Source: Fimbriosthenelais zetlandica (Eukaryota). Taken from it: DNA of 64,000 bases. Positions 35,901 to 53,900 of the stretch are shown piece after piece. The position numbers and the translations under genes were made by a program. The notes below the pieces were generated by a model. It saw nothing but the letters and a program-made list of their open reading frames with translations, did not search any database and was not told where the DNA came from. Each line of letters begins with the position of its first letter. Positions within the stretch are counted from its first letter, which is position 1. Location of the stretch: assembly GCA_977030845.1 (NCBI GenBank), contig OZ365109.1:39618001-39682000 (forward strand), in the 5' to 3' direction.

Positions 35901-38900
35901 CCCTCTATTATCCCTCTAAAAATCTTTGAAAAATATTCATTGGAAATTTTTTTAATCTATTGCAACACTACTATGATTTGTCTAAAATCCAAGGTATTAG
36001 TCTCATATATGACGTATGTTGATGACTCAAGCCTCTTACATAACCAATATTGATATGATTTGCTCAACAACATGAGCAAAAGAGCAGAAATAATTGGTCT
36101 ATTGTGTAGACATACGGTCAAATGGTGGTCAAATGTTGAGCTAATGTACAGGGTTTTGTAAGCTTTTTTGTGATACATATTACCATTCTTCAGGTGGCAA
36201 AAGAGAAATTGCGATGCAAAATCGCATGATTGGATTCTGATAGCTATGCAAAATCAACGTGCATATCATTTTTTTTCAAACCAGAATATACCCTGCAGTT
36301 TAGGTATCATTGTTATACAATGGCCTGTATAGTGTATGGTATTATAAGTGTCAATGATTCAACGTTATGTTCTGGTCACACCTGGCAAGGTTATCATTCA
36401 CACATGGTGTCTATAACATTAATATAGGTAGAGCAGGAGGACGACAAGGAGAGAGAAATGTTTAGTATACAACCCACAGAGAAAAGGCGTCATAAAAGAT
36501 CGGTAACTGATTCAGATTCTCAAAGTGGTATGAGCTATGACAATAACTGGGCTGGGTTCTCCTTGATTAGGTCCTGCAGATTGAGTTCAGTCTCCTGCAG
36601 GTTGGGTCCAGTCGCCTGCAGTCTCCTGCAGCTTGGGTCCAGCCAGTTACAGATTGCCCCCAGTTCCTTTGAGACCTAGTCCTGGTGTAGTGTAATAACT
36701 TATAGTGATAAAATAATTTAAGTGCATTTTCTTGTTTCTGCTTTCTGTATTCAGTAACTACTAAGGCCATCAGATAACAAGTTGTGATATTTTTTTTTTT
36801 TTTTTTTTTTTTTTACAAACATTTTGATTTTTAGAAATACCATATAAAATTTAATATTATTTGCAAATAAAAATCAATTAAACATGGAAATACTTGTCAT
36901 AAAGCTCCTAATTCATAAAATATGTATTTTTCTGAAATAGGGGTTTTCTTCTGTGATTTGTTCCCACTTGTTTACAAGTTGTAACTCTGGACATTGATGT
37001 TCTGCCTGTGGCTGCAGCTTAACATCTGGGAATGTTGCTTCAGTGAATGCTGCATGAACTAGAGTCACCAGCTTTAATTAAGTTTGTTCCATGGTGGGAT
37101 TTTGGGTCGCCTGTCGAAAAGCAGTATAGTGACATATAAGGAAGCTTTATTGCTGTATACCTTTGTATTGCTTCGATTCATATAATATACTATATTCATA
37201 TGCTTCAAATTTGATTACGAGTCGTTTTGAAAACTGCCTTTTGCCTGCGATACATTATATACCAACAGTTTACAAATGAATTTTTGTTTTGCTTAGTAGT
37301 CAGGTTGATGAATGGAATATGAAATTGGAAGGAACTTACAGAAGGAAATAGACTATGAAAATATGATAAATTATCTGATGATAGTCCTATCCTTTTCTGC
37401 AGCAGTATTTTAGTCAATATTCATAGCGAATTTACATTGGAAAATTAGCATTAAGGTCGTATAATATATATAGCAAGCTTGCTACTAATATCTATGCAAA
37501 TGGCCTATCTGCTATAAATTGCATGACGGTAGCAGACTGACTAAGATAGCTCTAAGTGACATTAGCCTTAACTTAGTTTCAAATGTGGATAGAATGTCAT
37601 AACGGTTTTTAATCACAACAGTGTTTTGATAAACTTATTTATATATGAAATATATTCTTCAGGATATTTTTTCCATAAATGCTGTATTGTTTGATATTGT
37701 CTATCAGCTTTTATCAGTGCCTTCAATATCACGATAGATCAGTATTATAGATAGCAGTTAAGATGGTTTATCCTAGAAAATATCTACAATATAGCCAAAA
37801 TATGCATTCAAATTAATTCTATTTATCCAAATATTTGGAACTGTTTTTCAAATGAGCAAATTTACAAATGAATTTAGGCTGATTTTTAGGTATTTTGTCT
37901 ATCGCATCTAAGCTATCTTAACTATTATCCGAGTGTTCTATGTGATAGTGGAGGCTTTTTTCCATTATTGTCTCGTGTTATTATGCTGATATTGTAAGCA
38001 TCATATATACTCTCATATCAGGATGTCCACAGTTTAATTACTCTAATAAGTCACAATTTTCTCCATAACATTATTTTTCTTCCATTTTCATCAATTTCCC
38101 TCTATATTAATAACCTTATTTTCGTCCATCTTTGAAACTACATGTAGATGAACAAATTATTATATGAATTTGTTCTTGTAGAGTCATAGACCCTTTACAT
38201 TCTCAACATCTTGTTATTTCTTTCATTTTTCCATCCATGACTTTTGAGAGAATTCCTCAATCTAAATTGAGATATCAACTTTCCAAGCCCAAAAGTAACC
38301 TGTTGTAAATAGTTCAAATTTGCCCTGAATTATTTCTAACATTCGAGATATTGCATCTTGAGTGAATATTGAATTATACATGATTTAGTATTTGATGGTT
38401 TTATTTTGGTATTTGTTTGCAGTATTTCAAGAAAGCCAATAAGCTTGGAGATCAAGCTAAGAAATTGAAAACCCAAATATGGAGTTCTGTGGTTACGATT
38501 GTCCTGGTGGAGGGGAAGAGTCTGCTGCCCATGGACGACAATGGTTTCTCGGATCCTTATGTTAAGTTCCGGTTAGGAAACGAAAAATACAAGAGTAAGG
38601 TATGTGTCAGGATTCTCACTTTGGGGTATGTCAATACCAAGATTCTCACTTGGGTATGTACATGCCAATTCCAAGATTCTCACTTGGGTATGTACATGCC
38701 AATTCCAAGATTCTTACTTGGGTATGTGTGCCAATTCCAAGATTCTCACTTGGGAGTATGTCAACTCCAAGATTATCACTTGGATATTTACCTGCAAATT
38801 CTCACTTGGACATGTACACGTGTCAATTCAACGATTCTCACTTGGGTGTATGTATAAATTCCAAGATTATCACTTGGGTATATATATATGTGTAATCTCA

Positions 38901-41900
38901 GGTGGGTATGTGTGAATTCCAAGATTCTCACTTGGATATGTGTCAATATCAAGATTCTCACTTGAAAAGATCATGGTTGCCTTTTCAATGGAGAAAGGGC
39001 GTGCTACAAGCATTCATATACATTATGTTTCTGTGAATTTTTATTTTGTAAAGGGGAATGCATATACTGTATACTGAATGTGATCTGTGCTCATTTGTTG
39101 TGATGTACAACGTTCTTGTCAACATGGCTACCGTCACAACATAGCCACAGTTTTGTTCCTCTGTGTTGGAAACTCCTCCTAATTCGAGTCCAATTTTTTT
39201 TGTCATCTGAAATTGTAAATAATAGAAATGTATCCTTCACAACGTATAGTTGCAAGGAATTATGAAAAACATGAGACTCAATGTAGGCCTGTTTAAAGTG
39301 GATATTGAGTCCTATTTGGGAAGTAAACAATCCTTAGCATAATTTTTGAGAAAAAAACTATATTCAGGCAGTGGTTGATATCCACCAAGGTTATTTGCAG
39401 ATGTTGTAAAGTGTTATTCCTCTTAAATTGCTTTTGTTTTACATTGATGTCTATTGACAATGTTTTTTCCCGTATTATAAGCATGTTTATACTAAGTTCT
39501 CGCATATTTTGTATATTATCAGTCAATTTCAGAATGCCATATGTTCATTATGTATACATGTAGCTATCATTTTATGGTGTACCATGGGTTGTTGCTTAAT
39601 CCTGCAACCACTCAAAAGTCCTGATTTTCAACTGAACAGCTTGCAGAATTGGAGAATACATTTGGAATGCATTATAATACTCACCAGATTTTACAAGCTG
39701 TTCGTTTGAAAAACAGGTATCTTGGGGTGCTGGAGGTATTATACGATGCCCTCAATATCTTGTGGACCATCGATATTGTTTCTTTGCTTTTAAAAGTAAT
39801 AATTATACATGCATGTTTGTCATATATTTTTGACTGGATCACTTTTTACAGGCCAAGAAATATAATCAGAGAATATAATGACAATTGCCTAGGAACATTT
39901 TAATACATTAGCCTATTTATTGATAAATTTTAAGATGATTTAAATTTTCCATCTGCTTTGGCATTGCTTTTTGCTGACAATTGCCTTTTGCTTTTTGCGG
40001 GCCTCTTTGCCTATATATCTGGAATTTTTACCGCTGTAGGAATCTCTTTATAATACATTCAGTCTTAATGGCCAATAAGAAAGTAATTTTTCACAACCTT
40101 TTTGTCTAATTTTCTGTCCTCAGGGTTCCCAGCCATCCAGGGAATTTAGGGTTGAAATATGTTTTTTATTTTATTTTTTCCTGTAAGAGAGAAAACTCTT
40201 TATTTTGGAAGTCCACATTTTTAAAACAAGCAGTTTTTAAGCTAGCAGTTGTGCTAGCTCCCGCAACTGCCGTATCTGCATCTAGGGAACCCTGGAGGTG
40301 CTGGGGAGCCTGTAGAATGTATGTTCTGTGAATGAGTACTGATGGACACTCTCTGTGGTGTCTATCTTCAGGTTGTCCGTCAACGTCGCCGTGCCACCAG
40401 ATCACGTCATCATGTAGGCTCCCACCAACCATATGCCTCCTCCTCCACTACCACCTCTTCTTATTCTTCCATCTACTCTTCTTCCTCCTACTCTCCTTCA
40501 CCAGAGAGTGTTGATAATGTGACTAACTCCTTAACCATTTAATATGTGATCATATTTAGATGTTTCCAGGCTCTCTCCGCTATCTTCCTGCCCATTATTC
40601 AGTGCTGGCCCCTACTGTTAAAGTGTTGAACTATAAATGTATATAATATCAAGGATGCAAGTGATCACCAACCATCAATATACATTGAAGTATCAATATA
40701 ATTTTTAGTATTCCTAGACATTTTGGATTTTCCTCCATTCTACACATTTCATTTTGTTTCATTTATTGGTCCATTATATGCTCAAAAATGTAAGAAATTA
40801 TCGGAATGTCAACATTAATATTAAGATTTTATGGTTGTTTTTTAATTGCCTCACTTGCATTCTTGACAGAAGAGTGTGTCAAAACTAGGGCTGGTTGCAC
40901 AAAGCAGAATCACCAAACAGTTATTTTATTCAAAAGAAATTCTAGGGCTCTTTCATGAGAAAAGATATGGAATGCATTCTATTGCTATTTGGTAATTTCC
41001 TTATCTGATTTCCCAACATCATTATAGTCACTATAAAATGTGAATGGGCCATCTTATTTTGGAACATTTCAAATATATACATTTAAATTTTATACATCTG
41101 TTAGTGGAAACAAATTCTGAACAAGTAGGCCTATGCCCATGAATTACTGAACGCTCTTGGCCAAATTTATTTTTAAAAAATCGACAATAGCCTATGGAAT
41201 TATGATGGAGGCTTTATGCAAATTGAACAGCCTAATAACCTCTGAGTGACTCTGCTGTGGGGTAACCTGTCCATGCACCAGTAGGTCAAACTAATGTGTT
41301 CTTCGTTTAGGCAGTTGGTAACACATGCTGTTGGTGTTGTGGCGCTCCTGCGAGGGAAAGAAACCAATGCTAATAGGCCATGGAATATATATGGTGCCAT
41401 TTCCTCCCAAATATGGAGTGTTCATCCAGTGTCCATGTACAGTGTAATCTCACTAATTCGACCCTCCACTGTGAAATATTAATACGGACAGATCCATCTT
41501 TGGGACCAAATTATTGTCATATTGTGGGAAACACCACGGTGGTGTAGTGGTTAGAGTCTCTGCCCCGTGTGTGGAAGGTCGCAGGTTCAAACCGTGGCCG
41601 GCTCAAACCAAAGACTTAAATATTGGTACTAGCGGCTCCCTCTGTTGGCAGTTTGAACCGTGACGACAGTGCTATGATTGGTTGGCCTGGTGTCAGGAAA
41701 ATGTGATTGGATGAGGTATCATGTCATGTCATGTGTCAGACGAGATACCTCAGTGTGGCAGCAATATAAAAGAGCCTAGGTCTCACTGTCATCAGTAGGC
41801 ATTGTCATGATATAACTGCTGGGCTAATTCTAACCACAAATTTCTTTTAGCAAAAAGTGCTAATGACACCAAATTTCTTTTAACAATTTGCAGTTGGCGT

Positions 41901-47900: not shown

Positions 47901-50900
47901 CAGTTATTTAAAAACCATTTAGTGAGTCTTCCCTATTTATGGCAAATAGTCCATTTGCATTGACCCAGAACTTTGCTAGCCAGGTAACAGTTTGGCAACG
48001 ACACCCAAGCACCGTATTGTGCTACTAGTACAAGCCAGGGTGGAAGGTCAACTTATCCGCAATTAAAAACCATTTTTAGTAAAAGCAACCCGTGGTTTTT
48101 GAAATCATATTATGGATAAGAATTGACACATGGAAGTAAATTCGGATTATTTTATTTTGTTTCAGGGCCTTATGAACTCATTTAAGAACATCAGAGACAT
48201 TGGCTGGCTCCAAGTCAAAGGTAAAATAATTGCATTGTTTTTAATCAAATTAGAATTAAGTTAATTAAATGTAGCCTAAATGTAGTAGGTATGGTATTAA
48301 GCCACAGAAAAAAAAACATCCAAACATGTGAATTAATTGTCAACTTTGTGATTGATTTTATTTATTTTTTCCAGTGATAAAGGCTCAGGGTTTAGCTGCA
48401 GCAGATTTAGGTGGAAAGAGTGACCCTTTCTGTGTCATAGAACTCGTCAATGACCGCCTACAAACTCAAACAGAGTACAAGACGCTCTTCCCTGAGTGGG
48501 GCAAAGTATTTACACTGTAAGTGCAAATAACTTTCTCTATTTTATTTTTTATTTTTTTTTACGAATTTTCTCGAGGGATTACACCATGGGTCAGGCAGTA
48601 TTGTTCTTGAATGTGGGAGGGCTCTAGTGCTGTTAAAAGGATGAGTCATTTTTTCTTACTGAATGTGGTACGATACATACAGCACAATCCTAACTTTTGT
48701 CCAATAGCCTGAACCCATTGATCTACGATCTCCCTATGATCTTTTTGAACTTGCTCAAAATAAGAAGGTAGGGTGTTCTGATCCCTGAAGAACATGAACA
48801 TGATCGTAGGTTCATTCAACATACTTCTAAATTTTTGGATCGTAATTGAATCGTAAAGCAGATTGTAGGGAAATCGTAGCTCAGTGAGTTCAGCCTATAA
48901 TACTCTGATTAATTATCTATTCATATGATTAAATAGTTTAGACTCTCTTTCAATTCACTTTCTTTCCTAAACTTTTAAACCTAGCCTAATAGAAACCTAG
49001 TAGAAATATTCCATGGTATTCCATGTCGGACAGAGCCATGTCACCCACATTGTGAGGTGGCACACCAGATCTCAAATCTAGAACTAATAATTTTTGCAAG
49101 GATTATGTAAGTAAGCTCTGTAGAACACCCCTAATAATTTTTATGATGGACTTTTTCTCTTTAGAAATGTGAAGGACATTCACTCAACATTAGAAGTAAC
49201 AGTTTATGATGAAGACCGGGACAAAAAATCTGAGTTTCTGGGTAAAGTGGCAATACCTCTACTGCGGGTGAGTGTGTTTTATTATTTTATAAAATGCTAA
49301 TGAAACAACTGACAAAAGTGAATCTTTTTACCAGGTTCTGGGACAAGAAAGATTTGTTCCTGATTCATTTGTTGATCAATATTAATCATAATAAAAGTTG
49401 TACATAAATGCCCTTTTATTTTAAAACTGGAGCATGGAACTATATTCCGAGGCTCAGCCAATCAGATGGCACGAAATGAGGTCAAGCAATGTTATGTAGG
49501 TCACTAGGCCATGAATGATCTTAATGTCCTATGTATACAATGTATCACGTTTTTGGGTCCCTAACTTATCTGAATCGAGACAAATTTAAAGATATTTAAT
49601 AAGAAATTACGACCTTGGATGTGAAATTTGAAACAATCTGTCAATTTTTCAGCCATTTAATATTCCCTATTACATTATAATCACTACCTTGTATTTATTC
49701 CCACTGGCTTGTACATCTTTGCTTTCCTTATGAAAAGACTTGCCGTATTTCATATTATCGATCACTTTTAATTTAATGCTCACGCTCAAATTTCACTTGT
49801 ATTTGAATATGGAGTAAAATTGAGAAATAAATTTTGATTTAATAATCAAATTATTCATATACACAAAATAAAAGCACCATATGAAAGAATATGAAATCAC
49901 AAAAAAGTATCGTCACAATATTTCGATATAACACATGTATTTTATTTTGATATTTTGAATGCTAATGAACAACATGCATGTAATAACGATGTCTATTTCA
50001 CAGTCTTTAACTAGGCCCACACCAAACCGACAGACAATTTTCGGCCCAATCACCCAATGATATTGATCTAGCAGATTGTCGGATCTTGACAATTTGGCCT
50101 TACTTCTATTTTTCTTCAAATTTTACCATCTGCCGGTTTTAAAACCAAATAATGCAACAGTAAAAAACTGTAAATTGTACAATGTCTGTCAGCCTGGTAT
50201 GTGGACACCTTAAAGTGGTGGATCCAGAGAAAATACATTTTTTCTAAAACCTAATCTGAGTGGATGGGAAAGGGGGTCCGTTGATCGCCATTTAGAAATC
50301 ATTTTCCTTGGGCCAATCTGTAGCCCATTCTCTTGGCACTCAGCGGTAAGTGGACAGTGGCCAACCTGGTGACTGGGTGAGGTATCATGTCATGTGCCTG
50401 CGACATGATACCTCAGTGAGACAGCACTATAAAAGAGCATATGGCTCACTATCACAATCAGGGACCATCATGAGACCAGAAATTGATGAAAGCTAAAGTT
50501 AAAACACATTAAAACCTAATCAACCAATCTGGATCCACCCCTAACTTAATATCATTTTTCTCTCCTCAGCCCTGCTTATGCTAATATTTGTAATCACTCT
50601 ACTGGTTGTTTCCACTCTCAAGTTACATGGAGTGTACGGCAACCCTCACTTTCAGATCCGCTGCGGAGAAAGGCGCTGGTATGCCCTCAAAGACAAGAAA
50701 CTGACAGGCAGGGCTAAAGGTGCCATCCAGTTGGAAGTAGATTTCATCTACAACCATGTAGGTGACCTGTATACACAAGGGTCAAAATTCATGTACAAGT
50801 GGCTTAGGTTGAAGACCATGAAATATTTTGTTTCTAGTAAACCATCTCCAATATTTTAAAGCCTTGAATACATTGAATGAGATTTTTGTCGGAGCAGATG

Positions 50901-53900
50901 ACGAAAAATCCACTTAAGTGTGTTCAAGGCCTTGCTTTTCTCTCCAGGCCAACTTTGTTTTCTGTTAGCTATATTGATGTTGGACTTTCAATAAGACTGA
51001 AATGCATTAACATTTGGGAATTTTTCTAAAACAATTTTTAAAAAGAATATTTTATTGGAAACAGTAATGTTTTATGGTCTAGCAGGCGTTATCTCCTCAA
51101 TGATATATCAGTCTAGAGCATGTCATTCTTAAGTTGGTGAACCTAGATAGTTTTCAAAATTAAACAAAGCCAATAACTGAAAAGCATGAATGAAAGAATC
51201 ATTGAGGCATTTTAAAAAGGGTTTCTTTGTTTTCTTTCTGCAGATTTTGCTGCTGATTATTAAGGCTTAAGTTGAATGTACATAGACTGTGGGTTTGAGG
51301 AGATAATGATATGTACTCAATATTGTATTGTTGGATGTTGAATTGTGAAGATGAATGTTATCAGCGAGATGTCACACTGATTCATCCTATTGCAGCATTC
51401 TTATACATTTCTTGCTCTAAAATCTGATTGCTTAAAACTCGGTTCTTACATGTATTGGTATCTATAAAATTGCATTTTACTTTTTTGCAATGCTGCTGCT
51501 CCTTGAAATATAAAAATTGGGTCATATACAAATTTGCAAGTGGAAAATACTCTCACTGGACCCATCATCAACACATGGGGGTTTGCGTTATCCCCTCACC
51601 TTTTCTTGCAAATTTGCTATATTCTTGTTTACAGTGTGGCATCTCCTGACATGTTGCACCCTCCGTCTGGCCCTGTGGCATCACTGTGGCTGCCTCCACC
51701 TCTCTCACATTGTACATTCACCCACTGGTCCTGGTCTAGTCTAATCTATGTCACATCCTAGTGCTTAACTAACAGTAGCCTATTGCACCCCTTACTGTTT
51801 ACAGATCAGAAATGGCGAAAGGCGATGGTATCAATTAAAAGATAAGAAAGTCATGGGGCGAGCCAAGGGGGCTGTCCTATTGGACATGGACTTCGTGTTT
51901 AACCATGTGAGCGCTCATTCAAAAGAACGGAGAATTTATTTAAAATTTCATGTTTTCTAAGAGTTCCTTCACAGTAGAGAGTACCATGAGAGTTCTACTT
52001 ATTTTTTAACATCATGCTGTGATTTTTGGATCCCGGTTAAATTTCGGTTTTCTGGATTTTATAATTATTAAATATATTGGAAATTTCTAATTATAATGTA
52101 CTGCTTTTCACTACAATCCCCCATTTCTCCTCGTAGGATACTTCTACGGTATTTTCTAAGGGATTTTTTTTCCGAGAATTTTTTGTGTGGGGAATTTTAG
52201 ATTATTCCGGTGTCTACTCTCGGCTTGCCTTTGTCTTGAGCTTTTGTGTAATATTTGTGATTATTAACATTTTGGCAATGCAACTGTTTCACTCTTCTTC
52301 CTATTCATCTCTGCCTTTAATAATAATTATTTTAATGATTGAATAATACTAATTTCTACTTCTAAATCCTAACCAACTAGCCCTATAGATTAAACACTTT
52401 GAATCCTAACTACTTGCAAGTCTTCTTTTACATTTTTTGCCAGAATGATTTTACCGGTACTATCCCTTAAATCCTATTATTCCTTTCATCTAAAGTAATT
52501 TTCTTAAAATATAAGAAAATATGTTTGAAGTGCTTTTATAACCATAAGATAACACTTACTGAATTTAAATGTAGATTCTTGTTACAGCCAATTAGACATT
52601 TAGCTGATCATTTTCTTACTTGACAGATAAAAGCTGCTGTTAGAACTTTTAATCCACGAGAAGAAAAATATATGCAACCAGAACCAAAGTTCAAAATCTC
52701 TGTAAGTATATCCTCTAAAAGGAACCCCCATAGTTTAGCTACATCGAGGAGATAACTATCTTTCGAAATTCAATTAATTTGGCTAAACTTGTTAGTATAA
52801 TATTCTTGCCAAAACATGGCAATACATGGCACATTCCAGTAGGCATAGCTCTGGAACTATTCAGTGTATACAAATATAATTTCAAGTCTGAATTAAATGG
52901 AAATTGAGTAAAAAAAAATTAAACAAAATACATGATCGAGATTGACCGTGATGATTTGATTCTGGTGATTTATATTAGTATGATGTGGTGATTTGGTATG
53001 ATTTTGGTATTTTGATCTTCAGGTCATGAAGAGGAACATTGACAGAGTAAGCAAACTGGTGGAGGCGGCTGTTGAAGCTAGTAAATTCATACAGAGCTGC
53101 TTTGACTGGGAATCCAAAATACGGAGTTCTGCCGCCTTCGCTGTGAGTACTTTCCTTATTAAGCCTGGAACACATTAATGCGATTCTCTCTCCGTCTCCA
53201 TCCGATAGCTGTCAGAAACTATATAATTTCTCTTCACACCAAATGCCTGCAGGTTGGGTCCAGTCTCCTGCAGGTTGGGTCCAGTCTCCAGCAGGTTGGG
53301 TCCAGTCTCCTGCAGGTTGGGTCCAGCCTCCTGCAGGTTGGGTCCAGTCTACTGCAGTTTGGTTCCAGCCTCCTGCAGGTTGGGTCCAGTCTACTGCAGT
53401 TTGGTTCCAGCCTCCTGCAGGTTGACCTCTGCCCTACCATTTGGGTCCAGTGTCCTTAGTTAAAGCCTCACTTAATCTAAAGTAAGGAAGCATACATTAT
53501 AAATAATGAAATGTTGTTTTATTTTGCTCCAGGTGTTCATGATCATAGTGTGGAACTTCGAGCTGTACATGTTGCCTATCACGCTACTAATCGTCTTCGC
53601 CAAGAATTTATTAGTCGTCCATATAGCAGGCAACTTGATGAAAGAGGACGATGTGAGTCATACTTTACATCTATATTTCTACAGCTCAGTGGGTCCTATC
53701 TCCTTTAGTGGAACTATTCTGTATCAATTAAAGCAAAAAGTAAAATAACTTGCAGGATTCCCAGGAAGTCTAGCATATAGGTCATGTAAATTGTTTCTCA
53801 GATGGGGAATGGGAATGGTCTGAAACTTGAAATAGTACTTGATGATTCTTTGGCTCAGGCTCAGTAAACTGTCAACATAGACTGGACTGATTCTTTATAT

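What the first reader, a model, noticed from the sequence alone, without database searches (positions are those of the whole stretch)
50656..51906. Tandemly duplicated, probably mutually exclusive exon pair encoding the end of C2C
Two 102-nt, phase 0-0 exons encode the same segment with 24 of 34 residues identical ([34 protein letters not shown] vs [34 protein letters not shown]). Many synonymous differences and intact splice sites indicate an old duplication with both copies under selection. Including both would duplicate the terminal beta-strand. They are 1047 nt apart and double inclusion keeps the frame, so neither steric hindrance nor NMD explains exclusivity; RNA pairing or regulators would be needed. 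I do not recall this being described for MCTP but cannot check.
Basis: partly seen in the sequence, partly recalled or inferred. Interest (0 to 1): 0.85.

Follow-up and report, generated by a model that had tools for sequence, protein, structure and literature searches.

The report
Twin alternative exons in worm MCTP
A calcium-sensor gene (MCTP) in this probably annelid genome holds two side-by-side versions of the exon that finishes its third C2 domain; both have been kept intact in at least six worm genomes, so the gene very probably makes two sensor variants, an ordinary kind of splicing switch that I found no description of for this gene.

Summary
Exon A (50656-50757) and exon B (51805-51906) are each 102 nt and phase 0-0, with AG/GT borders. 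They share 24/34 residues and 67/102 nt. The window holds no third copy.

The gene is an MCTP (three C2 domains plus a PRT_C membrane region). The exon encodes strands beta7 and beta8 of C2C and the loop between them.

The same A-then-B pair, intact, occurs in five other genomes, including Capitella teleta, where B is not in the annotated protein. Introns do not align between these genomes and synonymous sites are saturated, yet pN/pS is about 0.2-0.25. Both copies are therefore old and under selection.

B exons share an invariant Gln (WYQLKD) and a more hydrophobic beta7-beta8 loop. A keeps the state seen in single-copy species. Ridgeia, a nemertean, an oyster and a bivalve-like contig have one copy.

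Spliced transcripts of a relative carry B alone. The Capitella gene model carries A alone. None of 499 related proteins carries both.

No RNA run was listed for this species, so one-at-a-time use is inferred, not shown. Steric hindrance, frameshift/NMD and U12 incompatibility are excluded, and I found no intron complementarity.

The scan has noted many other such exon pairs in this genome, in other genes. This is a new member of a known kind.

The parts
49165..49267 (+). Constitutive upstream exon of C2C. It encodes strands beta5-beta6 and the DEDRDKK calcium-binding loop, and its donor is CGG|gtgagt.
   Evidence: Sequence. tblastn of Patella P0011 and transcript P0222 aligns here. Orthologous exons in six loci are 73-88% identical at the protein level.
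50656..50757 (+). Exon A, 102 nt, phase 0-0. It is the variant that keeps the state of single-copy species (Ala at position 10; polar loop LTG; ...IYNH). Borders: acceptor ttcag|, donor |gtaggt.
   Evidence: Position-equivalent A exons occur in L002, L014 (Capitella), L004, L005 and L008.
50758..51804 (+). Intron between the two variants, 1047 nt. It has no alignable counterpart in other species and no significant complementarity to the flanking introns.
51805..51906 (+). Exon B, 102 nt, phase 0-0. It is the derived variant (invariant Gln at position 10, WYQLKD; hydrophobic loop VMG; ...VFNH). Borders: acceptor ttacag|, donor |gtgagc.
   Evidence: B-type exons lie in the same second position in five other genomes. 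The B type is used alone in spliced transcripts L001 and L007.
52627..52701 (+). Constitutive downstream exon, 75 nt, phase 0-0. It encodes the linker helix after C2C ([15 protein letters not shown]...).
   Evidence: In the AF2 model the helix starts right after beta8.

Best explanation
These are two alternative versions of one coding exon of an MCTP gene, made by an ancient tandem exon duplication in an annelid lineage and included one at a time. Each encodes beta7, the beta7-beta8 loop and beta8 of the third C2 domain. In a topology-II C2 domain this loop lies on the same end as the calcium- and membrane-binding loops. The calcium-ligand aspartates lie in the constitutive exons. The switch therefore yields two C2C variants with the same calcium site but a different neighbouring surface. 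A keeps the state of single-copy species. B carries an invariant Gln in beta7 and a more hydrophobic loop, which I infer tunes membrane or partner binding. Shown: the homology, the intact splice sites and frame, the conservation and purifying selection of both copies in six genomes, and B-only spliced mRNAs in a relative. Inferred: that this species splices in exactly one copy per mRNA, that the choice is tissue-regulated by trans-acting factors, and that the variants differ in function.
For: The anatomy is. There is no third copy. MCTP identity rests on tblastn of Patella, chiton and transcript proteins along 16.7-62.2 kb and on Pfam C2 plus PRT_C in the relatives. The same A-then-B pair, each 102 nt with AG..GT, occurs in L002, L003/L014 (Capitella teleta KB309412.1), L004, L005 and L008. 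Only exons align between these loci. No copy has a stop codon, pS is about 0.9 and pN about 0.21-0.25; the A exon of L005 versus L008 has pN 0.04 at pS 0.97. B exons cluster in the tree (82/91; labels cluster in 0 of 500 shuffles; a single B clade is not rejected, p-AU 0.21). Position 10 is Gln in all 7 B exons and never in A, and B's loop is more hydrophobic in 6 of 6 species. Transcripts L001/P0222 and L007 carry B only. Capitella protein P0268 carries A only. None of 499 related proteins has two segments. For the structure, PDB 2EP6 (human MCTP2 C2) ends one residue before the exon end, and in the AF2 model (pLDDT 87) exon residues 94-127 cover strands 101-108 and 115-128.
Against: There is no RNA evidence from this species: no run was listed, so read laying could not be used. 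No A-only and B-only transcripts were found from one and the same organism. The Capitella A-only product is a gene model, not necessarily a cDNA. It is unknown whether the organism behind P0222 has an A exon. Co-inclusion and double skipping both keep the frame, so nothing at the RNA level is known to forbid them, and one assembled transcript (P0151) skips the segment. Capitella's A exon nests inside the B cluster, so the history includes either gene conversion or weak signal from only 34 columns. The functional difference is an inference from residue patterns alone.
Confidence: 0.75

Rival explanations
1. Only one copy is used. The other is an unused relic (pseudo-exon) of the duplication that merely looks intact.
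For: No RNA data exist for this species. Capitella's annotation uses only A. Ridgeia has a single copy, so a copy may have been lost there, or the pair may never have been present.
Against: Both copies keep their length, frame, AG/GT borders and core residues in six genomes whose introns no longer align and whose synonymous sites are saturated. pN/pS is about 0.2-0.25 for A and for B. B is the segment present in spliced mRNAs L001 and L007. A is identical in protein between L005 and L008 at pS 0.97.
Confidence: 0.05
2. The exons are alternative but not strictly exclusive. Appreciable shares of mRNAs include both or neither, giving in-frame +34 or -34 residue products, and the correct proteins are sorted out only at the level of folding.
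For: All three outcomes keep the frame. No enforcing mechanism was found: introns are long, donors are U2-type, and there is no complementarity. The assembled transcript P0151 lacks the segment in both of its repeated halves.
Against: None of 499 related proteins and transcript fragments carries two segments. A C2 domain with beta7-beta8 doubled or missing cannot form the eight-stranded sandwich. P0151 is visibly misassembled (an internal repeat of about 360 residues), and its source genome is unknown.
Confidence: 0.15
3. The choice between A and B is enforced by competing RNA structures (one docking site and two selector sites), as in insect Dscam, 14-3-3 zeta or Mhc.
For: This is the best-known mechanism for in-frame exon clusters with long introns, and tandem duplication can create competing arms (PMC6071210, PMC9013439). 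One 10-nt match lies between the B acceptor region and the downstream intron in L004 (reached by 0 of 100 shuffles).
Against: No intronic block is conserved between any two of the six loci. Duplex energies between introns are ordinary (|z| < 1.6). The longest reverse-complement matches equal shuffled expectation in 14 of 15 intron pairs. The inverted repeats in the window are AT-rich and only 71-81% complementary.
Confidence: 0.15

Closest known systems
Mutually exclusive exons derived from tandem exon duplication (for example the human tandem duplicated exon substitutions of PMC9741552 and PMC8373072, the human MXE landscape of PMC5740500, and the C. elegans ME clusters of PMC4165533)
   Same: The exons are adjacent and homologous, with the same length and phase and intact sites. 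They replace a structural element inside a folded domain. They are ancient and both copies are under purifying selection.
   Different: The gene (MCTP) and the lineage (annelids) do not appear in those papers' main text. Exclusivity is not shown by RNA here.
MCTP1, MCTP2 and Drosophila Mctp (ER-resident calcium sensors with three C2 domains; PMC5449185, PMC8351558, PMC13537348)
   Same: The domain order is the same. C2C is closely related: 2EP6 (human MCTP2 C2) matches with E 3e-47. The calcium-ligand aspartates are conserved in the constitutive exons.
   Different: In the annotated isoform sets of the molluscs, the nemertean, the crinoid, the hemichordate and amphioxus examined here, this segment is encoded once. 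The papers I searched describe no exon switch in C2C.
Docking-site/selector MXE clusters (Dscam exon 6, 14-3-3 zeta, Mhc; PMC6071210)
   Same: The variants are in frame, the introns are long, and exactly one variant is expected per mRNA.
   Different: No conserved or statistically unusual intron complementarity was found in any of five species tested.

Membership tests
Tandem-duplicated mutually exclusive exon pair | Adjacent exons that are homologous to each other | tested here: met
   24/34 aa and 67/102 nt are identical. The reciprocal tblastn E-value is 3e-15, and these are the only two hits in the window.
Tandem-duplicated mutually exclusive exon pair | Same length and phase, with intact splice sites on both | tested here: met
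   Both are 102 nt, phase 0-0, with AG acceptors and GT donors, in the window and in five other genomes.
Tandem-duplicated mutually exclusive exon pair | Both copies maintained by selection across species | tested here: met
   Six genomes have both copies. pN/pS is 0.22-0.25 at saturated pS, there are no stop codons, and the introns do not align.
Tandem-duplicated mutually exclusive exon pair | Each mature mRNA contains exactly one of the exons | tested here: inconclusive
   B-only spliced transcripts exist in a relative (L001, L007). The Capitella model is A-only. None of 499 proteins carries both. No RNA run was listed for this species.
MCTP (multiple C2 and transmembrane domain protein) | Three C2 domains followed by a C-terminal two-helix membrane region (PRT_C) | tested here: met
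   Full-length MCTPs align exon by exon from 16.7 to 62.2 kb. Pfam finds C2 and PRT_C in the nearest relatives P0222 and P0268. Hundreds of named MCTP orthologues are 55-60% identical to the window's exons.
MXE enforced by steric hindrance | The intron between the variants is too short (under about 60-80 nt) for both to be spliced | tested here: not met
   The A-B intron is 1047 nt here and 158-2111 nt in the other genomes.
MXE policed by frameshift and NMD | Exon length is not a multiple of three, so double inclusion or double skipping gives a premature stop | tested here: not met
   102 nt is 34 codons. The neighbouring exon is also phase 0-0.
MXE by U2/U12 spliceosome incompatibility | One flanking intron has U12-type consensus sites | tested here: not met
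   All donors are GTAAG-, GTGAG- or GTAGG-type and all acceptors are AG in six genomes. No ATATCC or GTATCC donor is present.
MXE by competing RNA structures (docking site and selectors) | Conserved intronic sequences complementary to one common site | tested here: inconclusive
   No conserved intron blocks were found. Duplex energies and longest complementary matches are no better than shuffles in 14 of 15 comparisons. The methods were crude and no closely related genomes were available.

The most novel reading that the evidence does not exclude
The switch swaps the fourth top-side loop of a calcium-sensing C2 domain between a polar version (A) and a hydrophobic version (B). That would give worms two MCTP sensors with different membrane penetration or partner choice from one gene. 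Exclusivity would be kept without any of the four textbook mechanisms, that is, by a regulator-based or still undescribed mode.
Probability: 0.2. Interest if true: 0.6.

Novelty: new member of a known kind. Interest (0 to 1): 0.4.

Why it matters
MCTPs are ER-anchored calcium sensors implicated in synaptic homeostasis, lipid droplets and ER-plasma membrane contacts. How their three C2 domains divide the work is poorly understood. This natural switch has been kept across six deeply diverged genomes. It changes only beta7, beta8 and their loop in C2C and leaves the calcium ligands untouched. That points to this surface as functionally tunable and offers two matched variants for binding assays. 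It also adds to the many tandem alternative-exon pairs the scan has noted in this genome, and it shows that the Capitella reference annotation lacks the B exon. As a splicing phenomenon it is ordinary.

Tried and rejected
(1) RNA evidence. The look-up of sequencing runs listed no run, either for the 3.7-kb stretch or for a 186-nt constitutive exon, so read laying could not be run.

(2) The species' own protein. It is not in the 5.8-billion or 1.8-billion protein collections. The third search, with a 207-aa piece, returned mostly arthropod, nematode and vertebrate fragments and no A/B isoform pair from one organism.

(3) Isoform sets. The 90% clusters of ten annotated species showed one segment per species, so there is no parallel switch there.

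(4) The metagenome scan found a second B-only transcript and a sixth genome with the pair, but no A-type transcript of the same organism.

(5) Intron comparison. blastn between the six loci aligned only exons.

(6) Docking/selector search. RNAduplex between introns was first too slow. In three species it then gave |z| < 1.6. Longest reverse-complement matches equalled shuffles, except for one 10-mer in L004. The window's inverted repeats are weak and AT-rich.

(7) A weak "QKSKLWYQ" hit in L017/L018 is noise, and those contigs end too soon to say whether a second copy exists.

(8) Accession searches for the source assemblies found no paper, so the species behind L002, L004, L005 and L008 remain unnamed.

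(9) One look-up failed (Lineus P0205 not on record) and one gave no DNA (P0004).

(10) A first script scanning all frames timed out and was replaced by tblastn.
Full report
**Observation**

The two segments exist exactly as described. Window 50656-50757 and 51805-51906 (+) each translate without a stop into 34 residues. Each follows a ...cag acceptor and precedes a gt donor. They share 24/34 residues and 67/102 bases, and 12 of the 24 conserved codons differ synonymously. The adjoining intron sequence is no more similar than chance. A tblastn of either peptide against the whole window finds just these two places (E 1e-15 to 1e-21; the next hit has E > 0.2), so there is no third copy.

The upstream constitutive exon is 49165-49267 and the downstream one is 52627-52701. 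The downstream exon is 75 nt and also phase 0-0. Inclusion of one, both or neither therefore keeps the frame.

**The gene**

Full-length MCTP proteins align exon by exon from about 16.7 kb to 62.2 kb on the + strand. These include Patella caerulea P0011, a chiton protein, oyster proteins and others. Both A and B align to the same residues. The nearest relatives carry Pfam C2 domains and the PRT_C membrane region.

The closest sequence found is P0222. It is an 817-residue product of an intron-less 2886-nt contig from a JGI sample (L001), that is, a spliced mRNA. It is 60-89% identical to the window per exon. The window's own protein is not in the protein collections.

**What the exon encodes**

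The solved structure 2EP6 (a C2 domain of human MCTP2) matches this domain with E 3e-47. It ends at the residue before the last codon of the alternative exon.

An AlphaFold2 model of P0222 residues 430-565 was built on a 70-sequence alignment (mean pLDDT 87). It has eight strands followed by a helix. The exon corresponds to model residues 94-127. These cover the turn after beta6, strand beta7 (101-108), a six-residue loop, and strand beta8 (115-128).

The domain starts with the strand that precedes the D-x-G-G-K-S-D-P loop and ends with an extra strand after W-Y-x-L. From established knowledge of C2 folds, that is topology II. In topology II the beta7-beta8 loop lies at the same end as the calcium-binding loops. 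The invariant aspartates lie in the constitutive exons. The switch therefore changes the last quarter of the sandwich and one top-side loop, not the calcium ligands.

**Conservation**

A profile of A and B searched against 1.8 billion representative proteins returned many short ORFs that are single genomic exons. Fetching their contigs, together with one metagenome scan, gave five further genomes with the same layout. In each, the order is upstream exon, an A-position exon, a B-position exon, then the downstream exon (the L005 and L003 contigs end before the downstream exon). The loci are:

- L002, an ENA assembly contig.
- L003 and L014, which are Capitella teleta scaffold KB309412.1.
- L004, a Logan contig of ERR14986678.
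- L005, from GCA_013332915.1.
- L008, contig JAAUXT010144061.1.

In all of them both exons are 102 nt with AG and GT borders. The intron between them is 158 to 2111 nt long.

In Capitella the annotated protein CAPTEDRAFT_227763 (P0268) uses the first exon. The second exon, at L014 11457-11558, is not part of it.

Between the six loci only exons align by blastn, at about 70-80%. Synonymous sites are saturated (pS about 0.9). Nonsynonymous differences are about 0.25 among A exons and 0.21 among B exons, and no copy has a stop codon. Between L005 and L008 the A peptide is identical (pN 0.04 at pS 0.97). Keeping frame, length and splice sites over that much divergence is not compatible with a neutral relic.

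**History**

In a tree of the 34 columns the B exons and the P0222 segment fall together (support 82/91). Capitella's A exon falls inside that group. The labels are clustered in 0 of 500 shuffles, and a single B clade is not rejected (p-AU 0.21). The alignment is short, so this is indicative only.

One column separates the sets cleanly. Position 10 is Gln in all seven B segments. It is Ala, Thr or Gly in A. It is Ala in 8 of 13 single-copy outgroups, with Thr, Ser, Met or Lys in the rest and never Gln. B also tends to Val31/Phe32 where A has Ile31/Tyr32. B's loop positions 16-18 are more hydrophobic than A's in six of six species. A thus looks like the conserved original and B like the derived copy.

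The pair is not general:

- Ridgeia piscesae (a siboglinid annelid) has a single copy.
- Tubulanus polymorphus has a single copy, and there the segment is fused to the upstream exon.
- Magallana gigas has a single copy.
- A bivalve-like contig, L012, has a single copy.
- The annotated isoform sets of Lineus, Magallana/Crassostrea, Mytilus, Haliotis, Octopus, Biomphalaria, Branchiostoma, Antedon, Ptychodera and Tubulanus each contain one version.

The duplication therefore arose within annelids, or was lost repeatedly. Notes by other agents on this genome independently call it probably annelid. They report many other tandem alternative-exon pairs and no RNA record.

**Usage**

No RNA run could be listed for this species, with either the 3.7-kb stretch or a constitutive 186-nt exon. 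The junction test could therefore not be done.

The indirect evidence is as follows. Two spliced contigs of a relative (L001/P0222 and L007) join the upstream exon to a B-type segment and then to the downstream exon. The Capitella model joins the same exons through A.

One assembled transcript of unknown origin (P0151) lacks the segment altogether. It is visibly misassembled, with an internal repeat.

Taken with the structure, the most likely reading is one exon per mRNA. A C2 sandwich cannot accommodate a doubled beta7-beta8 hairpin or do without one. I put this reading at about 0.75. The main reservation is that strictness is unknown.

**Mechanism of choice**

Three textbook mechanisms are excluded by the sequence:

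- Steric hindrance is excluded because the intron between the variants is far too long.
- Frameshift/NMD policing is excluded because the exons are in frame.
- U2/U12 incompatibility is excluded because all sites are ordinary GT-AG.

For competing RNA structures I found no support. No intronic block is conserved between loci. Inter-intron duplex energies in three short-intron species lie within 1.6 s.d. of shuffles. Longest reverse-complement matches equal shuffled expectation in 14 of 15 intron pairs across five species. The exception is a 10-mer in L004. The window's own inverted repeats are weak and AT-rich.

These tests are crude and the species are too distant for covariation analysis, so the model is weakened, not refuted. 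By elimination, regulated choice through trans-acting factors acting on weakly defined exons is the most likely mode. This is inference.

**Comparison and novelty**

The anatomy is that of a classic tandem-duplication-derived alternative exon pair. This class is well described in humans, flies and nematodes (PMC9741552, PMC8373072, PMC5740500, PMC4165533, PMC9013439). None of those papers' main texts mentions MCTP. Full-text searches combining MCTP with mutually exclusive exons or splicing found nothing relevant.

I therefore rate it a new member of a known kind. It is interesting mainly as a natural pair of C2C variants for MCTP biochemistry and as an annotation correction for Capitella. It is not a new splicing principle.

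Noticed in passing
L014 11457-11558 (Capitella teleta KB309412.1, about 71439-71540): The B-type exon is intact in the Capitella reference genome but absent from the annotated protein CAPTEDRAFT_227763, which uses only the A-position exon.
   Followed up: partly
L015 50521-50721 (Tubulanus polymorphus OZ123230.1): In this nemertean the upstream C2C exon and the A/B-homologous segment are contiguous in one exon. The intron that precedes the duplicated exon in annelids and oysters is missing there.
   Followed up: no
protein P0151 (metaclust, 1196 aa): This assembled MCTP transcript of an unknown lophotrochozoan joins ...AIPLLK directly to FKAAIRTV..., skipping the 34-residue segment. It also repeats about 360 residues internally. 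It is either a real skipping isoform or an assembly artefact.
   Followed up: partly
window 38611-38964: A tandem array of about 30-34 nt units (8-11 copies, 72-75% matches) starts right at the donor of the C2B exon (38420-38620). It gives long spurious ORFs.
   Followed up: no
window 53246-53424: A 21-nt minisatellite (8.5 copies, 88% matches) lies in the intron after the exon at 53011-53160. It is open in several frames on both strands.
   Followed up: no
B evolves faster than A in that lineage.
   Followed up: partly
L014 11151-11252: Capitella's A-position exon groups with the B exons in the tree, and its 3' half (...EMDVVFNH) is B-like. This may reflect gene conversion between the two copies.
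   Followed up: no
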